A DNA stretch of 63,584 nt, the filler included, from Octopus bimaculoides (lineage: Eukaryota), in the NCBI RefSeq assembly GCF_001194135.2. It is 7 parts of 7 records of this genome, joined end to end, with 100 filler letters (N's around TTAATTAATTAA, not from the genome) between each part and the next. Parts side by side here need not be neighbours in the genome. Positions count along the whole stretch, not along the records: positions 55,384 to 63,584 come from NW_026321172.1; 6 more parts are not named here. One strand, given 5' to 3'. Each line of letters starts with the position of its first letter. Within the stretch, counting starts at the first letter, position 1. Position numbers and translations under genes: made by a program. Positions 7,129 through 63,584 of this stretch are shown here, one piece after another. The notes below the pieces were generated by a model, which worked only from the letters and a program-made list of their open reading frames with translations, was not told the DNA's origin and did no database searches.

Positions 7129-7432
7129 TTTGATTGTTTATAATTAACAATATTAGGAGGGTTTTCTCCTTTAGACGGACCTTTATTTAAGGAGGAATTT
7201 ATTTAATGAGAAATTTGAATATGAACCAGACTTAGAGACAATGTTTTTGGTGTTTACTCTTTACCTTTTACCCTGAAGATGTCTAAGGTAATTTACTTAT
7301 TTAACTTGAATTTGACAGTTAAATATAACCTTATACAGAAATGTTGACACAGGAATAAACTTCAATAATAATGGATATCAGCGTCAAAACTCTCATTTAA
7401 ATATTTAGATAAATATATATATATATATATAT

Positions 7433-8100
7433 ATGAGAACATTCAGAACCAGAGAGAAGGAAACCATGATGGTCCTCTGGAAGACATTCGTCCTCCGCCG
7501 CCTAGATTACTGCTCACAACTATGGTCACCCACCAGTGTGAAATTAACAGCGGACCTTGAAGCAATCCAGAGAAGATTCACAAAGAAGATTGTCTCTTTG
7601 CAACTGCTCAGCTACTGGGAAAGGCTGAAACAGCTAAGACTCTACTCCCTGGAGAGAAGGCGGGAGAGGTATGCATTAATGTACATCTGGAAGATCCTGA
7701 AAGGAATTGTGCCAAATTTTGGCATTGAAAGCTACACCAATGCCAGAACGGGACGACACTGCATAGTGCCAAAGATTCCAGCAATGCCATCGCACTTCAG
7801 GACCAGTTACTGCAACAGTTTTGGGTTTCAGGGGCCCATAGCTTTTTAATATTCTCCGAAAAAGCCTGAGGAACCTGCACAAAGTAGATGTAGGGGTTTT
7901 TAAATCAAAGCTGGACCTCTTCCTGTCGAAAGTCCCAGATGAATCTATCTCACGGCAAGAGGTGCAAATGAGGGTAGCTACATCAAATTCCATTCTTCAC
8001 CAAGTGCCACATATTGGAGGAGGCTCTCAGCAATAACAGTGTAGCAAAACGGCGGTGCATCAGCATGGCCGCAACTCTGAGCTGAATCTATAATAAAAAA
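7433..8100 (+). mobile_element. 5'-truncated CR1-clade LINE (ORF2 C-terminus plus 3' UTR)
   Basis: LWKTFVLRRLDYCSQLWSP..LEAIQRRFTKKI..LSYWERLKQLRLYSLERRRERYALMYIWKIL is the typical CR1 post-RT region. Ends in an A-rich tail and starts at a (TA)n run. Confidence 0.92.
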
Positions 8101-8607
8101 ATATATATAAGTTCTCAAAGTGGATATATGTGACGCAGTAACTATTTTCTGGAGACATATTCCCGCAATTAGCACGCCAAAACAAAGACTTTTGATTTTT
8201 ACCATTAAGTTGTAATTAGCAGAACCATATACACGTTTGCCTCTGGGGGTGAACAACTTGTATAGGATTCTGAGAATTATGAGAATTATAACTCCCTTAC
8301 AGTTCATGCTGAAGAGAAGCAGACATTCGGTAAGAGTGCTGATTTCGAAACTGGTCACTGAATAATAATGTCTTATTTATGTAATTTTCACTGTCTTGCC
8401 TGCATACGTTTTGGTATTTCGCTGAATTTNNNNNNNNNNNNNNNNNNNNNNNNNNNNNNNNNNNNNNNNNNNNTTAATTAATTAANNNNNNNNNNNNNNN
8501 NNNNNNNNNNNNNNNNNNNNNNNNNNNNNAGATGCCGCTAAGCATGTTGCTTAACGATTTTACCAGCTCGCCGCCTTCATAATAATAATAATAATAATAA
8601 CAATAAT

Positions 8608-8887
8608 GATTGCAGCGTGGAAAGTATTTATTTGTAAGCTATTCAAGAACACACAAAACCCGTCAGTTTCACTTGAACATTTAAATTTCATTTCTGTCAA
8701 AATGTTTTTGTCGATTTGAAACCGCGACCTCTTCACTGGCGAAACTTCGTGCTGGATCACGAAATTTTGTCAGTGAACAGGTCACGGTTTCAAATCGACA
8801 AAAATATTTTGACAAAAATGAAATTTAATTGTTGAACTGTTTTTGTGTGTTCTTGAATGGCTTATAAATATCTTCCATGCTGCAATC
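8608..8887. mobile_element. ~280-bp foldback MITE (almost fully palindromic)
   Basis: gattgcagcgtggaaag..ttcaagaacacacaaaa..tttttgtcgatttgaaaccgcgacctcttcactg mirrors cagtgaacaggtcacggtttcaaatcgacaaaaa..tttttgtgtgttcttgaa..ttccatgctgcaatc. Confidence 0.88.
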
Positions 8888-8964
8888 GTTTTTGTTTCAG
8901 TACACGATCTCAGATCAAGTCACTTGCTATGCAAGTATATCTCCGATAATGATAATTCTTTCTG

Positions 8965-9560
8965 CTAAAGGCACAAGGCCTAAAATTTTGGTGGATGGGG
9001 ACTAGTCGATTACATCGAACCCCGGTATTCAACTGGTATTTATTTTATCGACCTCAGAAGGATGAAAAGCAAAATCGACCTCGGCAGAATTTGAACACAG
9101 AACGTAAAGGCATTCATAAATGCCCCTAAGCGCTTTACATGGCATGCTAACAATTCTTCCAGCTCACGGTTTTTAAAATGTTTATTTATTTATTTATTTA
9201 TTTATTTATTTTAAGGCAGCGAGCTGGCAGAATTGTTTGCACGCTGGGCGAAATGTTTAGCGGGATATCTGCCGTTACGTTCTGAGTTCAAATTCCACCG
9301 AGGTCAACTTTGCCTTTCATCCTTTCGGGGTCGATAAATTAAGTACCAGTTACGCACTGGGGTCGATGTAATCGACTTAATCCATTCGTCTGTCCTTGTT
9401 TGTTCCCTCTATGTTTAGCTCCTTGTGGGCAATAAAGAAATATGAAACGTTAGCACGCTGGGCAAAATGCTTTGCGGCATTTCGTCTGTCTTTAGTCTTT
9501 ACGTTCTGAGTTCAAATTCCGCCAAAGTCGACATTGCCTTTCATCCTTCAAGACATCGAT
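8965..9560. mobile_element. Two oppositely oriented copies of tRNA-derived SINE family A (8965-9170 minus, 9214-9560 plus)
   Basis: Head ggcggcgagctggcagaa..gttctgagttcaaattccgccgaggtcgactttgcctttcatcctttcggggtcgataaattaagtaccag, with box A- and box B-like motifs. Confidence 0.85.
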
Positions 9561-9699
9561 TATTCTGGTGCCGCAGGATAACCGTCGTGTCTGTGACTAA
9601 AAGTAGTAAACGGTAAGAGATAATAGATACAGTAATTTGGACATTGTCAATGGTGAACCTTGGATATTCCTGTCTCGAGCCCTACGGTCAATATTAGCA

Positions 9700-9918
9700 G
9701 TTACCCGGTTACCATAGCGCACAAGTGAATGTGATCACAACATTCTCCCTAAACAGAGACGCCAGCCCATCGTTGGATTACTCATTTGCACTTGAGTGGA
9801 CTGGAGCAAGGTGAAATAAAGTGTTTTGCTCAAGAACACAACGTACCGTTTGGGCTCGATATCGAAACCACGATCTTCCGATTGAGAGTGCAGCATCTTA
9901 ACCACTAAGCCATGCGCA
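9700..9918 (-). mobile_element. tRNA-derived SINE family D (body ttgtgttcttgagcaaaacactttatttcac)
   Basis: Minus strand: gcttagtggttaag..gatcgtggtttcgat tRNA-like head followed by a CORE-like body. Related copies at ~15900-16118, ~29400-29465 and 48557-48680. Confidence 0.65.
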
Positions 9919-9944
9919 TTGACTTATTTTGATTTCAATTTTTG

Positions 9945-10143
9945 ACACAAGGCCAGCAATTTCAGGACGGCTTTTAATCGATTACATCAACTCCAGTGTC
10001 GACTAGCACTTATTTTATCGACCCCCGAAAGGATGGAAGGCAAAACGAATCTCGACGGAGTTTGAAATCAGAACGTAAAGACAGACGAAATACCGCTAGG
10101 CATTTTTACCCGGCGCGCTAACAATTCTACCAAATCGCCGCCT
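9945..10143 (-). mobile_element. SINE family A copy
   Basis: Homologous to 8965-9170. Confidence 0.8.
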
Positions 10144-10677
10144 TATACACGCTCGCTAATTTGAGCATAGGAAAATACAATACGCAGATTGCCTAAGAGA
10201 GGATCGAACTTGCTATCCTGTTGTTTTGAGCATAGGAAACTACAATAAGCAGATTGCTTAGGAGAAAATTGAACTTGCATCTTGTTGTTTTCTATACAAG
10301 TAATTTGAGCTCAAAACAGAAATAACTTTAAACAGAAGAAAAAAAAACGACATATATCTAGATTGATTGATTACGGACAAATGTGTGGAGATATGATGGT
10401 CATGTGATCTGACTGTTGTGGTATTTATTTATCTCGGAGTGTAATCACAATAACTTCTGCCGGAAGGTGTGTATGGGGAAAAGTAGACATTCCTTCAATA
10501 AAGACCACCACCAGCGTCACCAAAATCACCCCGTTTAATACTTTTACTACTACTACAATTAATATCACTAACAACACCGCCCCTATGGCAGTGAGTGATA
10601 GTACCAATAACATTAATCCAAATATGATTACTAAATGGACTACATATTTTTCTACACCATCTTATACTTCTATAAAG

Positions 10678-11325
10678 TTTCTTTTCTACTCTTGGCACAA
10701 GGCCCGAAATTTTGGGGAAGAGGGCCAGTCGACTAAGAAGTACGTAACTAATACTTAATTCATCGACCCCCAAAAGGATGAAAAGCAAAGTTGACCCCGG
10801 CGGAATTTGAACTCAGAACGTAAACGGCAGACGAAATACCGCTAAGTATTTCACCCGACGTGCTAACGTTTCTCATTTCTTTATTGCCCTCAAGGGGCTA
10901 AACATAAGAGGGATAAACAATGTCAGACAAAGGGATTAAGTCGATTACAACGATGCCAGTGCGTAACTGGTACTTAATTTATCGACCCTGAAAATATGAA
11001 AGAGTAAAGTCAACCTCGGCGGAATTTGAACTGAGAACGTAACGGCAGACGAAATACCGCTAAGCATTTCACCCAGCGTGCTAACGTTTCTTATTTCTTT
11101 ATTGCCCACAAGGGGCTAAACATAGAGGGGACAAACAAGGACAAACAAAGGGATTAAGTCGTTTACATCGATCCCAGTGCGTAACTGGTACTTAATTTAT
11201 CGACCCTGAAAATATGAAAGGCAAAGTCGGCCTCGGCGGAATTTGAACTCAGAACGTAACGGCAGACGAAATACCGCTAAGCATTTCGCCCGGCGTGCTA
11301 ACGTTTCTGCCAGCTCGCCGCCCTG
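10678..11325 (-). mobile_element. Trimeric SINE family A (three tandem internal units) with a 12-bp target-site duplication
   Basis: The unit ...gaatttgaactcagaacgtaacggcagacgaaataccgctaagcatttc... occurs three times. tacttctataaa is present on both flanks (~10664 and ~11328). Confidence 0.85.
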
Positions 11326-55383: not shown

Positions 55384-55502
55384 CCAGCCAATCTCTGTGA
55401 AACACAGCCAATCTCTGTGAAACACAGCCAGTCTCTGTGAAACACAGCCAATCTCTGTGAAACACAGCCAGTCTCTGTTAAACACAACCAGTCTCTGTTA
55501 AA
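55384..55502. repeat. 20-bp tandem repeat (cagccaRtctctgtgaaaca) x~6
   Basis: Read directly. Confidence 0.92.
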
Positions 55503-55790
55503 GACTTTATACGTGGTCACTCGAATTACTAGAAATAACGGTCAAATCTCCACACAGTTTAATGAGAAACATATAGATGTGTCACGGTTGGAACGCCTTT
55601 GATCANNNNNNNNNNAACATATAGATGTGTCACGGTTGGAACGCCTTTGATCATTAATCGACTCAATCAAGGCTGATTGGCTGCTCAGCAATAAGTACAG
55701 AAATAACTACTACTACTACTTACTGTAAGACGCACGCACGCGCGCACACACACAAACACACACACACAAAGAAAATAAAACATCACTAAC

Positions 55791-55951
55791 CGTTTCTCCA
55801 AACAACTTGCGATGTTGTATTAGAATAACGAATTGCAGGGTAGTGCTTCGTGACATCATGCGGACATTGAAAGGGGCCCTCATTGAGTATCAACCAGCCA
55901 CTGTCCCTGTCACAACCATTGTCGTTCGCTATATAGAAGCGACGCGTAGCT
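55791..55951 (-). CDS. Internal coding exon C of the same gene (R-ATRRFYIANDNGCDRDSGWLILNEGPFQCPHDVTKHYPAIRYSNTTSQVVWRN-G)
   Basis: Acceptor ttttttcaactccgcag|A completes the AG|A Arg codon left by exon B; donor AACG|gttagt. 161 nt, phase 2 in, phase 1 out. Missed by the ORF track because it has no start codon. Contains the RRFYI..GC..DxGWL motif. Confidence 0.9.
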
Positions 55952-56457
55952 CTGCGGAGTTGAAAAAAAAATCTCGTTTAGGTTTCAGAATAAGAAAATA
56001 TAAACATTTATTAAATAGCATTATGTCCGATGTGCACAATCGAATAAATCAGTATTTGATTAAAATAGATATCTGTGTATCATACTTAATATATATACAC
56101 AATGTCGATAGCTAGTTACTATTTCACTACTATGGATTTGTGGTGTTACGAACACAATGAATAACAGAGAGACAGGAAAACTCGTCCCAGCAGCGGCTAG
56201 TGAGAGTAAGAGAGGTAATCTCAGAACAAATATTGCAGTAACTGGCCTATCGTTGCATTACGCTTGATAAATAGATGGTTATACTAGCTTGTGTTAAAAT
56301 CCATAGCATAATCCCCAAAAGGCGTCATAAAATTTCCTTGATTAACGCAAGGGTAACCTGACAACGCTATCTATCTTAAAACACAAGTGCGTGTATACTA
56401 CACACACGCGCACACACACATACATACTCATACGCACGCACACACATACATATCTCT

Positions 56458-56850
56458 CTTGTTGGCACTCCGTCGCTTACGACGTCGAGGGTTCCAGTTG
56501 ATCCAATCAACGGAACAGCCTGCTCGTGAAATTAACGTGCAAGTGGCTGAGCACTCCACAGACACGTGTACCCTTAACGTAGTTCTCGGGTATATTCAGC
56601 GTGACACAGTGTGACACAGTGTGACAAGGCTGACCCTTTGAATTACAGGCACAACAGAAACAGGAAGTAAGAGTGAGAGAAAGTTGTGGTGGAAGAGTAC
56701 AGCAGGGATCGCCACCATCCCCTGCCGGAGCCTCGTGGAGCTTTAGGTGTTTTCGCTCAATAAACACACACAGCACCCGGTCTGGAAATCGAAACTGCGA
56801 TCCTCCGACCGCGAGTCCGCTGCCCTAACCACTGGGCCATTGCGCCTCCA
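56458..56850 (-). mobile_element. Full-length SINE family C in the intron between exons B and C
   Basis: Reverse complement of 15434-15816. Confidence 0.9.
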
Positions 56851-57184
56851 TAACAACCGCATACCAAATCAAATTTAGTCTCTGCTGATATAGGAAAATT
56901 ATAATTAACAAATCGGCAAGGTTGACAAATCTGCCGATAGGTTGGATATATTATATTTCATGATTAGTGAGGGAAGCAGTTTTGGTTCAAATTTATATTC
57001 CGTATATCATAATCAATGAAGATATAATGGTGAAAGCCTAGAAATGCTTTGGGCGTTTCAAGAATATATCGTGAATAAATATAGAGTGTTACGAAACAGA
57101 TATATATATTAGTAGCATACGAAAAGTGCTTTTGGTACAATACGTCTATTCAAAGTGAAACAGAAAAATGCATTTATAACATAC

Positions 57185-57345
57185 CTTCCGTTAATAAGGA
57201 AATATTGTGGGGCAACTGAAGATAAGTCATCCCATGGAGAACTTTTCAAGTTTGCATGAGAGAACCAACTGCTAAGGTTTGTTTTTCGTCCATTAAAAAC
57301 CATAGTCACCACAGCTGTTTGGTTTTTATAAATCACCAGCTTCAC
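57185..57345 (-). CDS. Internal coding exon B of the same gene (VKLVIYKNQTAVVTMVFNGRKTNLSSWFSHANLKSSPWDDLSSVAPQYFLINGR)
   Basis: Acceptor cttacttttcag|GTG and donor GGAAG|gtatgt. 161 nt, phase 0 in, phase 2 out. The VKLxxY..vFNG....SWF...L.SSPWxDL pattern is one I recognise from an unnamed domain of molluscs and other marine invertebrates. Confidence 0.9.
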
Positions 57346-58288
57346 CTGAAAAGTAAGAGTAAATATATAACAGAGACACACACATACAACCCCCAAAACA
57401 AACACACACACACACACAAATAAATTTTATTGGTGGCTGTTAGCCTCATGTCCACTCCACACTTTCTCCCTCTACCACTCTTTCTCCTTACCCCTCGCTG
57501 GTCACATATCTCCAGCCACTATTTCCTTTCGTATCTTGGCTATCGCCAAGCACGCACACGAACATTCTTCGTCCCGCTTCCTTCCAGTTCGCTGCTTCGC
57601 AGCGTTCAGTATACACATATTTTGTCACGTCTGGCCGTAGAGCCTTTTTTTTTTGTTTTTTTTCACTGTTTCGTTTTCCTGTCGTGTTTTCTGTTCGCCA
57701 CTATATTCATCCATGGTACAAATTTAATTTGAGGTCCGTGGGAAGAGCCATTCTAACGAAGCGTCCTGCCCTGGCTCTTCGAAACGCTTAGTTTCAGAAT
57801 GGTGGCAGCTGATGAAGGAAATGTTCTCTATGTGGCCTGTGTGTTTTCTGTACTTTGTTTACCATTTTGTCCGCGTATTTTTGCAACGTCCTGTACCCAG
57901 ATATGCATCTATATATACATGTAGATGTAGGTATGTACATACATGTACGTATATATGCATATACTAATTTATTATTTGTATTATATATATATATATATAT
58001 GACGCAACGTCATATGGGTATAGAATGGTAATAGACACAAACAGATAACACTGGATGTTTGAATTTTATCACTCTTGGTATATGTCCTCAGATTGCACTC
58101 TCCTCAGACAGACACTAACCATTACAGTATGTTGTTTCCAAATTTGTGGCAGAGTGAATTGCATCATAGTGCTGTGTTTCTCACAGACGGTGCCCAACTG
58201 ACCCTCCAATAATGTATAGTCGACAAAATCAAAAACAATGTACGTGCGTGAAATAAAATATAATATGGCGACAATTTACCCATCGCAG

Positions 58289-58344
<56 letters not shown>

Positions 58345-58585
58345 NNNNNNNNNNNNNNNNNNNNNNNNNNNNNNNNNNNNNNNNNNNNNNNNNNNNNNNN
58401 NNNNNNNNNNNNNNNNNNNNNNNNNNNNNNNNNNNNNNNNNNNNNNNNNNNNNNNNNNNNNNNNNNNNNNNNNNNNNNNTTTTTTTCGTACATTCTCCCA
58501 AATATATATATATGCATACATACATCGCTGACCAAACACCATTCAATTTTTTTTCTCCGTGTTTTTCTCCTTGTTTTCTCCGTAT

Positions 58586-58622
58586 TCTTTCTGTTGAAGA
58601 GCGTAGCTCGAAACGTTAAAGA
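58586..58622 (+). ncRNA. Minimal type-I hammerhead-ribozyme-like motif (one core substitution) in a Penelope/retrozyme-like repeat
   Basis: tcttt-CTGtTGA-a-gagc-gta-gctc-GAAA-cg-TT-aaaga: stem I tcttt/aaaga, stem II gagc/gctc, palindromic ACGT stem III; core A6 is replaced by U. Confidence 0.6.
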
Positions 58623-59463
58623 CTTTCTGTATTCCCGAGCGTCAAACTAATACATCCTTTTGTTGTTTACACCACCTGTCCTCGTCTGTTGTTGTTTTTT
58701 TTTCGTACATTCTCCCAAATATATATATATGCATACATACAGTGTACATTTAAACACATAAGAGATGTCCATAATAGGACATCTTACCCGCTAGAAGGGA
58801 AACAGATGGTAAATGTTTTTATTTTTCATTCCTTTTCGAAATTATCCCTAATTGTGGTTTTGGAGTTTGACTGCTCCTTCTAGCGAAGTCCACTTGCCAA
58901 GTTCAATAAAACTTTAACCAGTCATGTCTCATAAACTGATTTCATAGATTTTGTTTCCCATTTACTCCCCAAAAGGAGAGCCTATTGTTTGTGATAAATA
59001 TCCATTTTACTCCGGTTTGCCGTGGAGAAAATTCATCACAACACTGCTTTATGTGCTTGCTATGTAATTCCTTCTTGCATGGCGGCCATCTCACGTGAAC
59101 ACTAGTCAATCTCTATTGATTTTCTATGAAGAAGATGCCTTCAAACGTCATTCCAGGATTGTCTTGCTTGGAATCTGATACTGACGATAGCAAAAGAGTT
59201 TGGAGTGCATACATCGGTCCACGGGAGCTTTTTGAAATGATTGTTGGTGTTTTAACACTTGTTGCCTAAGGCAAGAATTTTCTCCACGGTAAATCGCGGT
59301 GAAGATTGCCGTTTTTTCGGGTAAAAATGTGTCTGAAACATATCTAAACTGATCCAAAATATAATTTATCTTTATTACTATTATTATGATAAAGTGTGTG
59401 TAAAGGAATCTCATTACGTGTATGTGTGTATGTGTTGGAGAGAGAGAGAGGGAGAGAGGGAGG

Positions 59464-59507
<44 letters not shown>

Positions 59508-59539
59508 NNNNNNNNNNAGAGAGAGAGAGAGAGAGAAAG

Positions 59540-59577
<38 letters not shown>

Positions 59578-59582
59578 CATAC

Positions 59583-59761
59583 CTCATCGATTGGAAGCTG
59601 CTTCCAGAAATCAAGGATAGGATGCCGGAAAAAGTTAGGACAGAAGTTATCATTGCATTTGTCCACATTCCAGGTTGAAGGACTTCCTGTATTCATGAAT
59701 GATTCATAGACTTTCGAACCAGCTCCCATTGATATGGCATATGCTTTGATCCATTGACTAT
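59583..59761 (-). CDS. Internal coding exon A of an uncharacterised, probably secreted protein (xSQWIKAYAISMGAGSKVYESFMNTGSPSTWNVDKCNDNFCPNFFRHPILDFWKQLPIDE)
   Basis: Minus strand: acceptor ttatttcag|AT and donor GAG|gtatgt. Length 179 nt = 2+59x3, open frame, ends in phase 0 and joins exon B in frame. Unique, protein-like sequence embedded among repeats. Confidence 0.88.
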
Positions 59762-59825
59762 CTGAAATAACAACAACAACAACAATAATAATAATAATAA
59801 TAATAATAGTAATAATAATAATAAT

Positions 59826-59858
<33 letters not shown>

Positions 59859-59864
59859 TTATCT

Positions 59865-60056
59865 CTTCTACTATTGACACAAGGCCTGAAATTTTGGGGG
59901 AGGGGGTCAGTACGCTACTGGTACTTAATTTATTGAGCCTGAAGGATGAAAGGCAATGTCGATCTCAGCGAAATTTGAACTCAGAACGTAGCGACGGACG
60001 AAATACCACTAAGCATTTCGTCCAGCATGCTAACGATTCTGCCAGCTCGCTGCCAT
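59865..60056 (-). mobile_element. SINE family A copy between (AAT)n runs
   Basis: Homologous to 8965-9170. Confidence 0.82.
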
Positions 60057-60066
60057 TAACAATGAC

Positions 60067-60142
<76 letters not shown>

Positions 60143-60144
<2 letters not shown>

Positions 60145-60370
60145 CAGCAAGAAAAGCCCCTTCATTGCAAATACTGGGCTAAACTAAATGCAAAAGAAAT
60201 AGACAGAGAAAAATCCCAGCAATGGTTGAGAAGCTCAGGACTCAAAGCAGAGACTGAAGGATTTTAATTGCTGCTCAAGACCAAAGCCTCCCCACCAGAA
60301 ATTAACAAAAACATATAATGAAAAGAAACATAACAAGTAACTGCAGAATATGTGGAGATGGAAAAGAAAC
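60143..60370 (+). mobile_element. R4/Dong-like non-LTR retrotransposon C-terminal fragment
   Basis: KLNAKEIDREKSQQWLRSSGLKAETEG(fs)IAAQDQSLPTRN*QKHIM..SNCRICGDGKE: the pre-zinc-knuckle region of RLE-type elements. It starts directly after (AAT)n. Confidence 0.8.
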
Positions 60371-61949
60371 NNNNNNNNNNNNNNNNNNNNNNNNNNNNNN
60401 NNNNNNNNNNNNNNNNNNNNNNNNNNNNNNNNNNNNNNNNNNNNNNNNNNNNNNNNNNNNNNNNNNNNNNNNNNNNNNNNNNNNNNNNNNNNNNNNNNNN
60501 NNNNNNNNNNNNNNNNNNNNNNNNNNNNNNNNNNNNNNNNNNNNNNNNNNNNNNNNNNNNNNNNNNNNNNNNNNNNNNNNNNNNNNNNNNNNNNNNNNNN
60601 NNNNNNNNNNNNNNNNNNNNNNNNNNNNNNNNNNNNNNNNNNNNNNNNNNNNNNNNNNNNNNNNNNNNNNNNNNNNNNNNNNNNNNNNNNNNNNNNNNNN
60701 NNNNNNNNNNNNNNNNNNNNNNNNNNNNNNNNNNNNNNNNNNNNNNNNNNNNNNNNNNNNNNNNNNNNNNNNNNNNNNNNNNNNNNNNNNNNNNNNNNNN
60801 NNNNNNNNNNNNNNNNNNNNNNNNNNNNNNNNNNNNNNNNNNNNNNNNNNNNNNNNNNNNNNNNNNNNNNNNNNNNNNNNNNNNNNNNNNNNNNNNNNNN
60901 NNNNNNNNNNNNNNNNNNNNNNNNNNNNNNNNNNNNNNNNNNNNNNNNNNNNNNNNNNNNNNNNNNNNNNNNNNNNNNNNNNNNNNNNNNNNNNNNNNNN
61001 NNNNNNNNNNNNNNNNNNNNNNNNNNNNNNNNNNNNNNNNNNNNNNNNNNNNNNNNNNNNNNNNNNNNNNNNNNNNNNNNNNNNNNNNNNNNNNNNNAAT
61101 AATAATAATAATAATCTTTTCAACTAAAGGCAAAAGGCCTTTTGAACATGATGAAAAATTGTAACTGTTTGTGGAGACATGACTTGAGAATGATGAAGTA
61201 ACCCTAAACCATAATTACCTTAATGTTACCCTTGTGCAAGTTGTAGTACCGGCTGGTATCTGGCTTGGTTAGGGAACGCTTCCAGAGATGGTGTTTCATT
61301 GAAAATATCGGTGGTTGTATTACCACCATTTCAATATGAGCGAAAATATCAAATACAAAGNNNNNNNNNNCAGCACATACCCAAAGCACAAAGAACTACG
61401 CACGCTATAAGTGAAAGCACGCTATAAAATTAAAACTGCTGAATAATAATAATAATAATAATCTTTTCAACTAAAGGCAAAAGGCCTTTTGAACATGATG
61501 AAAAATTGTAACTGTTTGTGGAGACATGACTTGAGAATGATGAAGTAACCCTAAACCATAATTACCTTAATGTTACCCTTGTGCAAGTTGTAGTACCGGC
61601 TGGTATCTGGCTTGGTTAGGGAACGCTTCCAGAGATGGTGTTTCATTGAAAATATCGGTGGTTGTATTACCACCATTTCAATATGAGCGAAAATATCAAA
61701 TACAAAGGATTTGAAAAACGGTGTGAATGAGTGTGGAACTGATAACTGTGAAAATCTCTCGCCTGGTAAAGTAGACTTGGTCGTCATCTAGCGACTGCGG
61801 TTCGAAAGAAATGAGAGACGACGGAATGCAGCTGTGATGGAATGTTACATCCCAAGACCCGGTCGCCCTCTAGCGTCAGCGGTGGGAAAGTAAGGAGGAA
61901 AGAGGGAATGCAACTGTGATGGAATGTTACGTCCCAAGTGTAACTTGCA

Positions 61950-62110
61950 GATTTGGGTACATTGGACAGAATGAGAAAGCTATGGTTTGAAACGGAATTA
62001 TTTGATGTAACTCGACAGAGACTAAGTGATTAAGAAAGACAGATAAGATTGAAATGCTGGTTAACACAAGTAGAAATCGAAGAAATCAAATATAGAATCT
62101 ATCAGACGGA
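61950..62110 (+). mobile_element. Possible R4/Dong-like ORF N-terminal relic
   Basis: RMRKLWFETELFDVTRQRLSD*ERQIRLKCWLTQVEIEEIKYRI resembles the ..EQRLADQ.R.I....WL...EIEEI.. segment I associate with these elements. Confidence 0.45.
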
Positions 62111-63584
62111 AATTAGCAAGGTAAGACATAGATTTCNNNNNNNNNNNNNNNNNNNNNNNNNNNNNNNNNNNNNNNNNNNNNNNNNNNNNNNNNNNNNNNN
62201 NNNNNNNNNNNNNNNNNNNNNNNNNNNNNNNNNNNNNNNNNNNNNNNNNNNNNNNNNNNNNNNNNNNNNNNNNNNNNNNNNNNNNNNNNNNNNNNNNNNN
62301 NNNNNNNNNNNNNNNNNNNNNNNNNNNNNNNNNNNNNNNNNNNNNNNNNNNNNNNNNNNNNNNNNNNNNNNNNNNNNNNNNNNNNNNNNNNNNNNNNNNN
62401 NNNNNNNNNNNNNNNNNNNNNNNNNNNNNNNNNNNNNNNNNNNNNNNNNNNNNNNNNNNNNNNNNNNNNNNNNNNNNNNNNNNNNNNNNNNNNNNNNNNN
62501 NNNNNNNNNNNNNNNNNNNNNNNNNNNNNNNNNNNNNNNNNNNNNNNNNNNNNNNNNNNNNNNNNNNNNNNNNNNNNNNNNNNNNNNNNNNNNNNNNNNN
62601 NNNNNNNNNNNNNNNNNNNNNNNNNNNNNNNNNNNNNNNNNNNNNNNNNGATGGCTGAAGGTAAGCATAGGTATAACCAGGACCCAAAGATTTGTAGTAA
62701 CCATCATATTCCTGGTCGGAGGTAGCAACCAGAATTGTTGTAAGGGTTAACAGCAGAACTTCCATCGCGGCTGGACGGGTAAAACGAAACTGGAACATTC
62801 TTGGCTCTACGATTGCTAGAAGTAGACAAAAGGGGGAAAGAAATGGCATGAAAGAGAGAAAGCATGGAGTGGGGAAGGATATGAGGAGATTCAGCAATGA
62901 GACAAGAAGAATTTTAATATATAAAGAGAGAACGAGGAAGAGAAAGACAGGAAGAGAAGAAAAAAGTTAGAGACGCAGGTCCTGGGGAAGATTTTAAATT
63001 GCATTCAGTACGGGACCCAGGGTTTTGAAGAGTTTGGTATCACCTCTTAGTCAAGGCTGTTCCCAGGTTACTTTGGCCTGGAGTAGAAGTATTTGTTATG
63101 GCACCATCTATAGGTTAATTAGTAATTCAGTTGAACAGATGGGTCTCATTAGCCTGGTGGTGGTGGTGGTGGTGGTGGTATTGGGGTGGTATTGGGGGTG
63201 GTATTGGGTCTGATTCCAAACCTCCGACACCTTGCAATAATACTAAACCATAGGAAAGTGTTCGGCTGTAAACATTGAGGGAGAATCGGGCATCAAAGAC
63301 CCTGAAGCAGTTCAATGCTGTCTACAACCTCACTCTTGCCACTCCTACGACGACGCTGACAGGAAATTGTAGCACTTTTTGCTGTTTCTTTGGGTCCATC
63401 AATGACGCACTGCATTGGCAACAACCTGTCCTTCACACCACATTGCCCAGGCTTGGGTTAAATCGAACCGGATTAAACCGGACAACACAACAGAGAGGAA
63501 TTACATAAAAACTCAAACAGCATAGGAACAACCCGCGAATGGGGCTTTTGTGACAGATACTGGCAATTGCGCATAGAGCTATTT

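What the first reader, a model, noticed from the sequence alone, without database searches (positions are those of the whole stretch)
55791..59761. Hidden three-exon minus-strand gene encoding an unnamed, probably secreted domain
Seen in sequence: three unique islands splice with canonical AG/GT sites and matching phases (1>0, 0>2, 2>1), across introns of 2237 and 1233 bp, into 501 nt of open frame. The product is SQWIKAYAISMGAGSKVYESF..CNDNFCPNFFRHPILDFW..IDE-VKLVIYKNQTAVVTMVFNG..SWFS..LKSSPWDDL..R-ATRRFYI..GCDRDSGWL..QC..YPAIRYSNTTSQVVWRN. It has two close Cys pairs, conserved-looking Trp residues and three N-glycosylation sequons (NQT, NLS, NTT). The ORF track shows only pieces and misses exon C. 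From memory, the motif series matches an uncharacterised domain found in molluscs, cnidarians and amphioxus. Inference: a secreted lectin-, immune- or venom-type protein, possibly from an expanded cephalopod family. The GC..DxGW motif loosely recalls fibrinogen-related folds.
Basis: partly seen in the sequence, partly recalled or inferred. Interest (0 to 1): 0.85.

Follow-up and report, generated by a model that had tools for sequence, protein, structure and literature searches.

The report
Octopus secreted apple–fibrinogen-like gene fragment
The three exons are real and form the middle of an already-annotated but uncharacterised Octopus bimaculoides gene for a secreted protein whose main domain has no Pfam model, is widespread in marine invertebrates, and appears to be a very divergent relative of the fibrinogen-related (lectin-type) domain.

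Summary
Minus-strand exons 59761-59583, 57345-57185 and 55951-55791 have AG/GT borders, phases 1>0, 0>2 and 2>1, and give 501 nt of open frame (166 aa). Both flagged N gaps lie in the first intron.

The gene is not hidden. UniProt A0A0L8FJM7 and RefSeq XP_052834195.1 (Octopus bimaculoides) use the same junctions. It is also not a three-exon gene. An Octopus sinensis paralogue has five coding exons (295/179/164/164/53 nt) with the same phases. A signal-peptide first exon lies at 62798-62649 and is cut by an assembly gap. The last exon is absent from the assembled sequence.

The family carries a signal peptide, a PAN/apple domain and a roughly 190-aa domain with no Pfam match. About 1,127 50%-identity clusters carry that domain, in molluscs, echinoderms, hemichordates, amphioxus and some bacteria. 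At least 26 loci occur in O. sinensis.

Bacterial members join a canonical fibrinogen-related A-subdomain directly to this domain. A confident AlphaFold model (pLDDT 87) finds almost only fibrinogen-related domains by Foldseek, but weakly (E 0.01-0.3, TM about 0.4).

Best reading: a secreted, divergent fibrinogen-like binding protein. Its ligand is unknown.

The parts
62649..62798 (-). Visible part of coding exon 1. It holds the ATG, a signal-peptide-like N-terminus (MFQFRFTRPAAMEVLLLTLTTILVATS|DQEYDGYYKSLGPGYTYAYLQPS) and the start of the PAN/apple region. It runs into an assembly gap.
   Evidence: tblastn gave 79% identity to aa 1-47 of O. vulgaris P0030 and 73% to O. bimaculoides P0188. Hydropathy peaks at 2.71 over aa 14-24. 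Exon 1 of the paralogue is 295 nt and ends in phase 1, which matches exon A's acceptor phase.
62137..62648 (.). Assembly gap (512 N). It presumably hides the remaining ~145 nt of exon 1 (most of the PAN/apple domain) and its donor site.
   Evidence: The N run is visible. Paralogue exon 1 is 295 nt, but only 150 nt are readable here. This is inference.
59583..59761 (-). Exon A, which is coding exon 2 (179 nt, phase 1>0). It encodes SQWIKAYAISMGAGSKVYESF...CNDNFCPNFFRHPILDFWKQLPIDE, the N-terminal part of the fibrinogen-like domain.
   Evidence: The O. sinensis paralogue has the same 179-nt length and phases. The exon is present in UniProt A0A0L8FJM7 and RefSeq XP_052834195.1.
57346..59582 (-). 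Intron (nominally 2237 nt). It contains both flagged N gaps (59508-59517 and 58345-58479) and microsatellites.
   Evidence: The equivalent paralogue intron is 2121 nt and holds no exon.
57185..57345 (-). Exon B, which is coding exon 3 (161 nt, phase 0>2). It encodes VKLVIYKNQTAVVTMVFNGRKTNLSSWFSHANLKSSPWDDLSSVAPQYFLING(R).
55952..57184 (-). Intron (1233 nt) carrying an interspersed SINE-like repeat at about 56662-56815.
   Evidence: The repeat is 84% identical to a segment just 3' of the O. sinensis paralogue.
55791..55951 (-). Exon C, which is coding exon 4 (161 nt, phase 2>1). It encodes (R)ATRRFYIANDNGCDRDSGWLILNEGPFQCPHDVTKHYPAIRYSNTTSQVVWRN. This part corresponds to the P-subdomain of fibrinogen-related domains and is the most variable part among paralogues.
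   Evidence: Mean pairwise identity among 16 octopod paralogues is 43% here, against 70% for exon A and 62% for exon B. The Cys pair aligns with the FReD (fibrinogen-related domain) Cys pair in global hhalign.
55385..55502 (.). A 20-bp minisatellite (5.9 copies) at the edge of the piece. It is not coding in my reading, although the RefSeq model translates it.
   Evidence: The same repeat resumes after a 1751-N gap on contig L002. It is followed there by a truncated second copy of the 3' half of exon C.
61578..61787 (-). Alternative 5' exon used by RefSeq XP_052834195.1 (MTTKSTLPGERF...YNLHK). It has no similarity to any family member and is of doubtful status.
   Evidence: It lies partly in a segment duplicated exactly on either side of a 10-N gap (61707-61445 = 61360-61098).

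Best explanation
Gene structure. The three islands are coding exons 2-4 of a five-exon Octopus bimaculoides gene (contig LGKD02026290.1, RefSeq LOC128251369). Exon 1 starts at window 62798 and encodes a signal peptide and a PAN/apple domain. Most of it is lost in an assembly gap. The 53-nt last exon, which in paralogues encodes the final beta-strand (..ADSMAIFIRL..), is not assembled. It probably lies in the N gap just beyond the piece.

Protein. The mature protein would be a secreted two-domain protein: PAN/apple followed by a roughly 190-aa domain with no Pfam model. I interpret that domain as a very divergent member of the fibrinogen-related-domain (FReD) superfamily. It has lost the canonical A-subdomain and the Ca2+-binding DxD motif. 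It keeps the first core strand (W-x-hydrophobic run), the two central antiparallel strands, the Cys..GW(L/W)..Cys loop and the C-terminal strand.

Family. The gene belongs to a tandemly expanded octopod family.

Likely mechanism (inferred, not shown). The protein is an extracellular binding module. The part equivalent to the FReD P-subdomain (exon C) would form the ligand site. Paralogues have diversified there. The ligand is most likely a glycan or another surface molecule, as for ficolins, FREPs and intelectins. The PAN/apple domain would add a second carbohydrate- or protein-binding surface.
For: Gene model:
- The open frame and AG/GT sites are in place.
- The peptide is 100% identical to two public models that use the same junctions.
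- The O. sinensis paralogue has identical exon phases and the same 179-nt exon.
- The window's exon 1 is homologous to paralogue N-termini and has a hydrophobic h-region.

Family size:
- 37 and 51 octopod proteins were found in two searches.
- Three family-sized genes lie within about 100 kb in O. sinensis.
- 1,127 50%-identity clusters match at E<=1e-3 and 650 at E<=1e-10.
- Sources include gastropods, bivalves, a chiton, echinoderms, hemichordates, amphioxus and Myxococcota.

Extracellular context of homologues: ZP, VWD, EGF, F5/8C, SUEL lectin, TSP1, kringle and fn3 domains, and TIG in bacteria.

PAN/apple domain:
- Foldseek on the full-length paralogue model hits HGF N-domain, plasminogen PAN and TgMIC4 apple domains, with TM up to 0.70 on the target.
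- Pfam PAN_3 matches below threshold.
- Pfam PAN_1 is recorded for the Acanthaster homologue.
- UniRef names two O. bimaculoides paralogues 'Apple domain-containing protein'.

FReD link:
- Bacterial members carry 'SC..G..sGvY.IDP...VyCDMTtdGGGWTlV' running directly into this domain.
- Their first 50-65 aa match PDB fibrinogen-related domains and intelectins at E 9e-6 to 5e-3, and Pfam Fibrinogen_C above its cut-off.
- hhalign of the mixed bacterial and metazoan profile against a validated FReD profile gives probability 97.4%, E 1e-11.
- A global hhalign pairs all landmark motifs in the same order.
- The AlphaFold2 model of P0002 has pLDDT 87.1 and pTM 0.84. About 45 of its top 50 Foldseek PDB hits are FReDs, the best being FGL1 at E 0.011, probability 0.89.
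- UniRef names an Elysia member 'Fibrinogen C-terminal domain-containing protein'.

Diversification: paralogues are 43% identical on average in exon C, against 70% in exon A and 62% in exon B.
Against: - No Foldseek hit reaches E<=1e-3. TM-scores are only 0.35-0.42, with rmsd 8-10 A.
- The significant hhalign and HMMER signal covers only the A-subdomain plus about the first 25 residues of the metazoan domain.
- The metazoan-only profile against FReD is not significant (E 0.74).
- Pfam Fibrinogen_C does not match any octopus or other metazoan member.
- The FReD Ca2+ site is absent, so FReD-type acetyl-sugar binding cannot be assumed.
- No expression, splicing or binding data were available.
- The locus lacks an assembled terminal exon. 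It is followed by a minisatellite and a truncated exon-C copy, so this particular copy could be defective.
Confidence: 0.6

Rival explanations
1. This copy is a truncated or decaying paralogue (pseudogene) in a rearranging tandem array. On this reading the three exons are intact only by recency, and the locus makes no functional protein.
For: No terminal exon (..ADSMAIFIRL..) is found anywhere on the 19.3-kb contig. Exon C is followed by a 20-bp minisatellite and, after a gap, a 5'-truncated second copy of exon C. The RefSeq model is flagged 'partial' and is chimeric.
Against: All three exons are open, with canonical splice sites. Every residue that is invariant across 52 family members is kept in the window's product. 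The missing parts coincide exactly with N gaps: 512 N inside exon 1, and 1751 N starting 407 nt after exon C. The paralogue's last intron is 818 nt, so the last exon would fall in that gap.
Confidence: 0.2
2. The roughly 190-aa domain is a new fold unrelated to fibrinogen-related domains. On this reading bacteria merely fused a FReD/COLFI-type N-terminal module to it, and the Foldseek hits reflect generic beta-rich similarity.
For: Significant sequence similarity to FReDs stops after about 60 residues. The metazoan-only profile is not significant against FReD. Foldseek E-values are 0.011 or higher and TM is below 0.5. The same bacterial N-terminus also matches Pfam COLFI at 42.7 bits.
Against: The region of significant similarity runs past the A-subdomain into the first strand and helix of the metazoan domain (GGGWTlV..G....W aligned with W.lvFR..G..vY..W). 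About 45 of the 50 best PDB hits are FReDs rather than a mixture of folds. The global profile alignment pairs the Cys pair, the FS(T/I) strand and the C-terminal strand in the same order. A PROSITE-derived UniRef name calls one member a fibrinogen C-terminal domain protein.
Confidence: 0.25
3. The protein is a structural or adhesive extracellular matrix, egg-coat or mucus component, or a venom or salivary protein, rather than a recognition lectin.
For: Homologous domains occur in ZP, VWD, EGF and TSP1 mosaic proteins typical of matrices and egg coats. The canonical FReD Ca2+/acetyl site is not conserved.
Against: The octopod proteins are small (about 290 aa), two-domain, secreted and multiplied in tandem. 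Their greatest divergence is in the P-like region. That pattern is more typical of recognition families. No tissue data were available either way.
Confidence: 0.3

Closest known systems
Fibrinogen-related domain proteins (Pfam PF00147: ficolins, FGL1, angiopoietins, tenascin, FIBCD1, mollusc FREPs, tachylectin-5)
   Same: Both are secreted or extracellular. The order of elements is the same: a W-rich first core strand plus helix, two long antiparallel strands, an 'FS(T/I)' strand, a Cys-x(4-5)-GW(W/L)-...-Cys loop, and a C-terminal 'M.I.(R/K)(L)(K)P' strand in paralogues. FReDs are the best and almost the only Foldseek hits. Bacterial members of the family carry a canonical FReD A-subdomain fused in register. 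Both are multiplied in molluscs.
   Different: The octopus and other metazoan members have no A-subdomain. There is no Pfam or HMMER match. There is no DxD Ca2+ site, and 'RRFYI' is inserted before the first Cys. TM is only about 0.4. A PAN/apple domain sits upstream, instead of a collagen-like, coiled-coil or IgSF region.
Intelectins / X-type lectins (hIntL-1, XEEL)
   Same: They set a precedent for a lectin in which only the N-terminal ~50 aa is recognisably fibrinogen-like and the remainder has diverged beyond sequence detection. The bacterial family members match XEEL and intelectin-1 over that segment (E 8e-5 to 1.7e-3; XEEL is the top hit).
   Different: Intelectins are absent from the top 50 Foldseek hits. 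No similarity is seen beyond the N-terminal segment. The intelectin Ca2+ and exocyclic-diol site motifs were not examined.
PAN/apple-domain proteins (plasminogen and HGF N-domains, apicomplexan MIC4 and SML-2 lectins)
   Same: The N-terminal domain of full-length paralogues superposes on these. Some paralogues are named 'Apple domain-containing protein' by UniRef. The Acanthaster homologue carries Pfam PAN_1.
   Different: Pfam PAN matches in octopus are only sub-threshold. In the window itself most of this domain is in an assembly gap.

Membership tests
Octopod PAN/apple + ~190-aa domain family (defined here by profiles A1 and A5) | Significant full-length similarity and retention of the invariant residues | tested here: met
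   E 2e-106 to 1e-21 against 37 octopod proteins. The window's product (P0001) is a row of A5 and keeps the 6 columns invariant across all 52 rows: W, S, C, W, C and P.
Octopod PAN/apple + ~190-aa domain family (defined here by profiles A1 and A5) | Conserved exon structure: 5 coding exons with phases 0>1, 1>0, 0>2, 2>1, 1>0 | tested here: met
   Exons 2-4 have the same phases, and exon 2 has the same 179-nt length, as O. sinensis LOC118768521. Exon 1 is partly visible. Exon 5 is not assembled.
Fibrinogen-related domain (Pfam PF00147 / PROSITE PS51406) | Match to the family profile above its threshold | tested here: not met
   There is no Pfam hit for the window peptide, 4 full-length paralogues or 32 diverse members. 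The profile search against PDB sequences finds no FReD. Only the bacterial members match, and only over their first 50-60 aa.
Fibrinogen-related domain (Pfam PF00147 / PROSITE PS51406) | A-subdomain: Cys...G.Y.I.P...V.CDM..GGGWT with its disulfide | tested here: not met
   It is absent in octopus and other metazoan members. The domain starts at the W strand, directly after a PAN or EGF module. It is present in 4 bacterial or metagenomic members.
Fibrinogen-related domain (Pfam PF00147 / PROSITE PS51406) | Homology of the core to FReD by profile-profile comparison | tested here: inconclusive
   The mixed bacterial and metazoan profile against FReD gives probability 97.4%, E 1e-11, but only over 60 columns. 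The metazoan-only profile gives E 0.74. The global alignment is collinear for all landmarks.
Fibrinogen-related domain (Pfam PF00147 / PROSITE PS51406) | FReD three-dimensional fold | tested here: inconclusive
   The model has pLDDT 87.1. About 45 of the 50 top PDB hits are FReDs, but the best E is 0.011, TM is 0.35-0.42 and rmsd is 8-10 A.
Fibrinogen-related domain (Pfam PF00147 / PROSITE PS51406) | P-subdomain disulfide bracketing the GWW motif | tested here: inconclusive
   C126 and C142 of the window peptide (GCDRDSGWLILNEGPFQC) are invariant in the family. They pair with the FReD cysteines in the global alignment. Disulfide formation is inferred.
Fibrinogen-related domain (Pfam PF00147 / PROSITE PS51406) | Ca2+-binding D-x-D motif before the first P-subdomain Cys | tested here: not met
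   The family has 'FSI.G....RRFYI...GC' where FReDs have 'FST.D.D.D....nC'.
PAN/apple domain (N-terminal domain) | PAN fold or profile match | tested here: inconclusive
   Paralogues give Foldseek hits to HGF-N, plasminogen and MIC4 apple domains, with TM up to 0.70 on the target but E>=6e-3. Pfam PAN_3 is sub-threshold at 13-16 bits against a cut-off of 21. Pfam PAN_1 is recorded for the starfish homologue. In the window only about 25 mature residues precede the gap, so the domain cannot be tested on this copy.
Intelectin / X-type lectin | Similarity beyond the fibrinogen-like N-terminal segment | tested here: not met
   phmmer and hmmsearch hits to XEEL and intelectin cover only the N-terminal ~50-100 aa of the bacterial units. 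No intelectin is among the top 50 Foldseek hits.
Fibrillar collagen C-propeptide (Pfam COLFI) | Profile match over the domain | tested here: not met
   Only the first 42 aa of one bacterial unit match above the cut-off (42.7 bits); a second unit matches only below it (15.7 bits against a cut-off of 26.2). Amphioxus units and the 32 diverse members, octopus included, give nothing.

The most novel reading that the evidence does not exclude
The ~190-aa domain may define a previously unrecognised, ancient branch of the fibrinogen-related-domain superfamily. It would be complete with an A-subdomain in Myxococcota-type bacteria and lack one in molluscs and invertebrate deuterostomes. Octopods would have multiplied it into dozens of secreted PAN-plus-FReD-like proteins whose P-like region has diversified. 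That would be a candidate lectin-type recognition repertoire parallel to gastropod FREPs.
Probability: 0.35. Interest if true: 0.6.

Novelty: new variant of a known kind. Interest (0 to 1): 0.42.

Why it matters
The gene itself is already in the databases, so nothing new is added there beyond a corrected model. The corrections are the true signal-peptide first exon, the missing last exon and a chimeric RefSeq 3' end.

What could matter is the domain. It has no Pfam model and no characterised member. Yet it occurs in more than a thousand 50%-identity clusters across molluscs, echinoderms, hemichordates, amphioxus and some bacteria, and it is strongly multiplied in octopods.

If the link to fibrinogen-related domains holds, the family would extend the FReD superfamily, a major source of invertebrate recognition lectins, to a cryptic branch. 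It would also give octopus immunity or surface-recognition research a defined gene family to test.

Tried and rejected
- Pfam scans of the window peptide, four paralogues and 32 diverse members found no family for the domain.
- Pfam DUF7922 scored 32 bits on a four-repeat amphioxus protein. It gave nothing on single amphioxus units of the domain, one from that protein and one from another. I rejected it as a cumulative weak match.
- HMMER against PDB sequences with the peptide and with the family profile gave only chance hits: an antibody light chain and TTK kinase.
- The first AlphaFold model (full-length P0006, 35 octopod sequences) was too poor in the C-terminal domain (pLDDT 69). Foldseek on it found only the PAN domain.
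- Two profile queries with the search for homologous proteins returned mainly close relatives of the first sequence, so little taxonomic breadth came from them.
- No terminal exon was found on the contig.
- ARAGORN found no tRNA. Rfam gave only sub-threshold mir-297 hits on a TA/CA-rich stretch on both strands, which I treat as chance.
- Three literature searches by locus identifiers found no paper.
- Junction-spanning reads could not be sought. None of the searchable collections holds octopus transcriptomes.


Full report
OBSERVATION

I read the piece 55384-63584 on the minus strand and rebuilt the proposed transcript.

| Exon | Coordinates | Length | Phase |
|---|---|---|---|
| A | 59761-59583 | 179 nt | 1>0 |
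| B | 57345-57185 | 161 nt | 0>2 |
| C | 55951-55791 | 161 nt | 2>1 |

Each exon is preceded by a pyrimidine-rich tract plus AG and followed by GT(A/T)(T/A)G. The introns are 2237 and 1233 nt. It includes the NQT, NLS and NTT sequons and the two Cys pairs.

The scan program asked that the N gaps be tested first. Both gaps (59508-59517 and 58345-58479) lie inside intron 1, within CA/CT and TA microsatellites. They affect only the nominal intron length. The protein alignment is uninterrupted across the A/B junction in all homologues. The O. sinensis paralogue has a 2121-nt intron with no extra exon at that place.

THE GENE IS NOT HIDDEN AND NOT COMPLETE

A search of the 5.8-billion-protein collection found UniProt A0A0L8FJM7 (Octopus bimaculoides, 157 aa). 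It is 100% identical over 94% of the peptide (E 2e-106). Its 90% cluster also holds RefSeq XP_052834195.1, LOC128251369, flagged 'partial', 295 aa.

The RefSeq gene lies on the 19,274-nt contig LGKD02026290.1, of which 8,276 nt are N. The window piece is positions 7193-15393 of that contig and is bounded by N runs on both sides.

Full-length paralogues (284-296 aa) show what is missing. They begin with a signal peptide and a ~70-aa two-Cys domain. They end with ..G(Y/F)..ADSMAIFIRL(K/R)...

I mapped O. sinensis LOC118768521 (P0006) onto its chromosome. It has five coding exons of 295/179/164/164/53 nt, phases 0>1, 1>0, 0>2, 2>1 and 1>0, and introns of 2121/1064/660/818 nt. The window's three exons are therefore exons 2-4, with identical phases and an identical 179-nt exon 2.

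tblastn also located exon 1 in the window at 62798-62649: MFQFRFTRPAAMEVLLLTLTTILVATSDQEYDGYYKSLGPGYTYAYLQPS. It is 79% identical to O. vulgaris P0030 and 73% identical to O. bimaculoides P0188. It has an n-region with two Arg and a hydrophobic core (Kyte-Doolittle 2.71 over aa 14-24). It runs straight into the 512-N gap at 62648-62137, which must hide the remaining ~145 nt, that is, most of the first domain.

The terminal exon is nowhere on the contig. By analogy with the 818-nt last intron, it should lie about 400 nt beyond the piece's edge, inside the 1751-N gap.

The RefSeq model differs in two ways. It starts at an unrelated ORF (61787-61578) that lies partly in an exactly duplicated assembly segment. 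At its 3' end it reads through a 20-bp minisatellite (55502-55385, resuming after the gap) into a 5'-truncated second copy of exon C. I regard both ends of that model as artefactual. This is inference.

THE FAMILY

In octopods I counted at least 26 named loci in O. sinensis and at least 14 in O. bimaculoides. There are also about ten O. vulgaris models and two from Argonauta hians. Many sit on the same chromosome-scale contigs. One O. sinensis model spans 101 kb and encloses two other family-sized genes. This is consistent with tandem arrays.

A profile of 16 octopod sequences was searched against 1.84 billion 50%-identity representatives. It found 1,127 clusters at E<=1e-3, 650 at E<=1e-10 and 55 at E<=1e-30.

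The sources I could look up were as follows:
- gastropods: Pomacea (many paralogues), Babylonia, Nucella, Batillaria, Littorina, Elysia
- bivalves: Mytilus, Potamilus, Solemya
- a chiton: Liolophura
- echinoderms: Acanthaster, Patiria, Asterias, Anneissia, Antedon
- hemichordates: Ptychodera, Saccoglossus
- amphioxus
- a Myxococcota genome

In amphioxus and echinoderms the domain sits in large mosaic extracellular proteins. It occurs one to four times per protein, together with ZP, VWD, EGF, F5/8C, SUEL-lectin, TSP1, kringle and fn3 domains. In the bacterium it follows eight TIG domains.

All members are named 'uncharacterized' or 'hypothetical', with three kinds of exception: domain-derived UniRef names ('Apple domain-containing protein' for two octopus paralogues and 'Fibrinogen C-terminal domain-containing protein' for an Elysia member), '-like' names given to large mosaic proteins after their other domains (for example von Willebrand factor D and EGF domain-containing protein-like), and one apparently spurious 'ADP-ribosyl cyclase' name. 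No paper was found under any of 18 locus identifiers.

WHAT THE DOMAINS ARE

No Pfam model matches the ~190-aa domain. This holds for the window peptide, for paralogues and for 32 diverse members. HMMER against PDB sequences gives only chance hits.

The N-terminal domain of paralogues is a PAN/apple domain. The evidence is:
- sub-threshold Pfam PAN_3 matches
- Pfam PAN_1 recorded for the Acanthaster homologue

For the main domain, three lines of evidence point to the fibrinogen-related domain (FReD).

(i) Bacterial bridge sequences. Four bacterial or metagenomic members (P0065, P0072, P0074, P0085) have repeat units in which a canonical FReD A-subdomain (SC..G..sGvY.IDP...VyCDMTtdGGGWTlV) runs without a break into this domain. 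The GGGWTlV strand aligns with the metazoan 'W.lvFR' strand. Those units match PDB fibrinogen beta/gamma, MFAP4, FIBCD1, angiopoietins, tenascins, ficolins and intelectins at E 9e-6 to 5e-3. They also match Pfam Fibrinogen_C above its cut-off. In both cases the match covers only the first 50-65 residues.

(ii) Profile-profile comparison. I validated the resulting profile against the PDB, where it hit all FReD chains at E 1e-102 to 1e-67 over their full length. hhalign of the bacterial-plus-metazoan alignment against that profile gives probability 97.4%, E 1e-11 over 60 columns.

A global alignment pairs the following in order:
- VKLxLY with yeLRvdL
- FSI.G with FST.D
- GC..D.GWL with nCA..GgWW
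- the second Cys with the second Cys
- the C-terminal AD.MAIfI(R/K) with t.MKIRP

The metazoan-only profile is not significant against FReD (E 0.74).

(iii) Structure. An AlphaFold2 model of the closest complete-domain paralogue was built from 52 sequences spanning molluscs and starfish. That paralogue is P0002, 69% identical to the window peptide. The model reached pLDDT 87.1 and pTM 0.84. About 45 of its 50 best Foldseek PDB hits are FReDs: FGL1, fibrinogen beta/gamma, ANGPTL2/3/6 and ficolins. The scores are weak, however: best E 0.011, probability 0.89, TM 0.35-0.42.

There are also clear differences from FReDs. The FReD Ca2+ DxD motif is absent, and the metazoan forms have no A-subdomain.

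I conclude, at roughly 0.6-0.65 confidence, that this is a highly divergent FReD-superfamily domain. It is not a member of Pfam Fibrinogen_C.

HOW IT PROBABLY WORKS

Shown:
- a multi-exon gene with a signal-peptide exon
- a product with three N-glycosylation sequons and two conserved Cys pairs
- a family whose homologous domains occur only in extracellular contexts

Inferred: a secreted two-module binding protein. Among 16 octopod paralogues, mean pairwise identity falls from 70% (exon A) and 62% (exon B) to 43% in exon C. Exon C is the region equivalent to the ligand-binding P-subdomain of FReDs. Across phyla, the same region nevertheless holds the most conserved scaffold residues (RRF.I, GC..D.GWL, C.W, P.I.YS).

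A fixed scaffold with variable surroundings, in a tandemly multiplied secreted family, fits a recognition (lectin-like) role. That role is unproven. Because the Ca2+/acetyl site is not conserved, the ligand cannot be predicted from FReD precedent.

RIVALS

- This copy may be a pseudogene, given the missing terminal exon and the minisatellite plus truncated exon-C copy downstream. However, all missing parts coincide with N gaps, and all invariant residues are intact.
- The domain may be a new fold merely fused to a FReD/COLFI-type N-terminal module in bacteria. Against this, the significant similarity extends into the first strand and helix of the metazoan domain, and the Foldseek hits are almost exclusively FReDs.
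- The function may be structural or adhesive, or the protein may be a venom component, rather than a recognition protein.

VERDICT

It is already annotated as uncharacterised, and it is incomplete in this gap-ridden assembly. Its interest lies in the domain family. The family has no Pfam model, is large, and is probably a cryptic branch of the fibrinogen-related superfamily that has expanded in octopods.

Noticed in passing
window 62649-62798 (minus strand), abutting the N gap 62137-62648: An unlisted first coding exon of the same gene. It holds the ATG, a signal-peptide-like N-terminus and the start of the PAN/apple region, and it is cut off by an assembly gap. The RefSeq model does not use it.
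   Followed up: yes
window 61578-61787 (minus strand); also 61445-61707 versus 61098-61360: RefSeq XP_052834195.1 starts at an ORF (MTTKSTLPGERF...) with no similarity to the family. Part of it lies in a 263-nt segment repeated with 100% identity on either side of a 10-N gap, which looks like assembly redundancy. An 82-bp tandem repeat lies at 61779-61938.
   Followed up: partly
window 55385-55502; locus L002 15272-15393 and 17145-17446: A 20-bp minisatellite (CAGCCAATCTCTGTGAAACA, 5.9 copies) ends the piece. It resumes after a 1751-N gap. There it runs directly into a second copy of the 3' half of exon C that lacks its 5' part (GWLSINQGPIYCHYDIMDQHPSIRYSDTKSKVVWGN). The RefSeq model translates the minisatellite and this fragment as coding sequence.
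   Followed up: partly
window about 56662-56815 (intron 2) and about 59930-60060 (upstream of exon A): These look like interspersed SINE-like repeats. The first is 84% identical to a segment just 3' of the O. sinensis paralogue (L001 15729-15882). Its translation also appears at the N-terminus of a MetaClust family model (P0007). ARAGORN and Rfam do not call either element a tRNA.
   Followed up: partly
window about 58696-58740 and 58480-58524, flanking the N gap 58345-58479: The same ~45-nt string (tgtatgtatgcatatatatatatttgggagaatgtacgaaaaaaa) occurs twice, the second time directly against the gap. This is probably an assembly artefact inside intron 1.
   Followed up: no
window 59766-59858 and 60067-60143: Long (ATT)n microsatellites of 31 and 26 copies lie immediately upstream of exon A's acceptor. 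The first grades into (GTT)n and serves as the polypyrimidine tract.
   Followed up: no
window 57899-57972, both strands: Rfam mir-297 matches at 38 bits, against a gathering score of 90, on a TA/CA-rich low-complexity stretch. They occur on both strands and are almost certainly chance.
   Followed up: yes
proteins P0065 (Myxococcota MCK6544734.1), P0072, P0074, P0085: Bacterial or metagenomic giant proteins carry 2-3 tandem units of a FReD/COLFI-type A-subdomain fused to this domain, after TIG repeats. One unit's first 42 aa score higher on Pfam COLFI (42.7 bits) than on Fibrinogen_C (36.4 bits). Whether these arose by horizontal transfer from or to animals was not examined.
   Followed up: partly
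O. sinensis CM016888.1, gene model of P0191: One 295-aa family model spans 101 kb and encloses two other family-sized genes (296 and 221 aa). This suggests exon mixing between tandem paralogues in the annotation.
   Followed up: no
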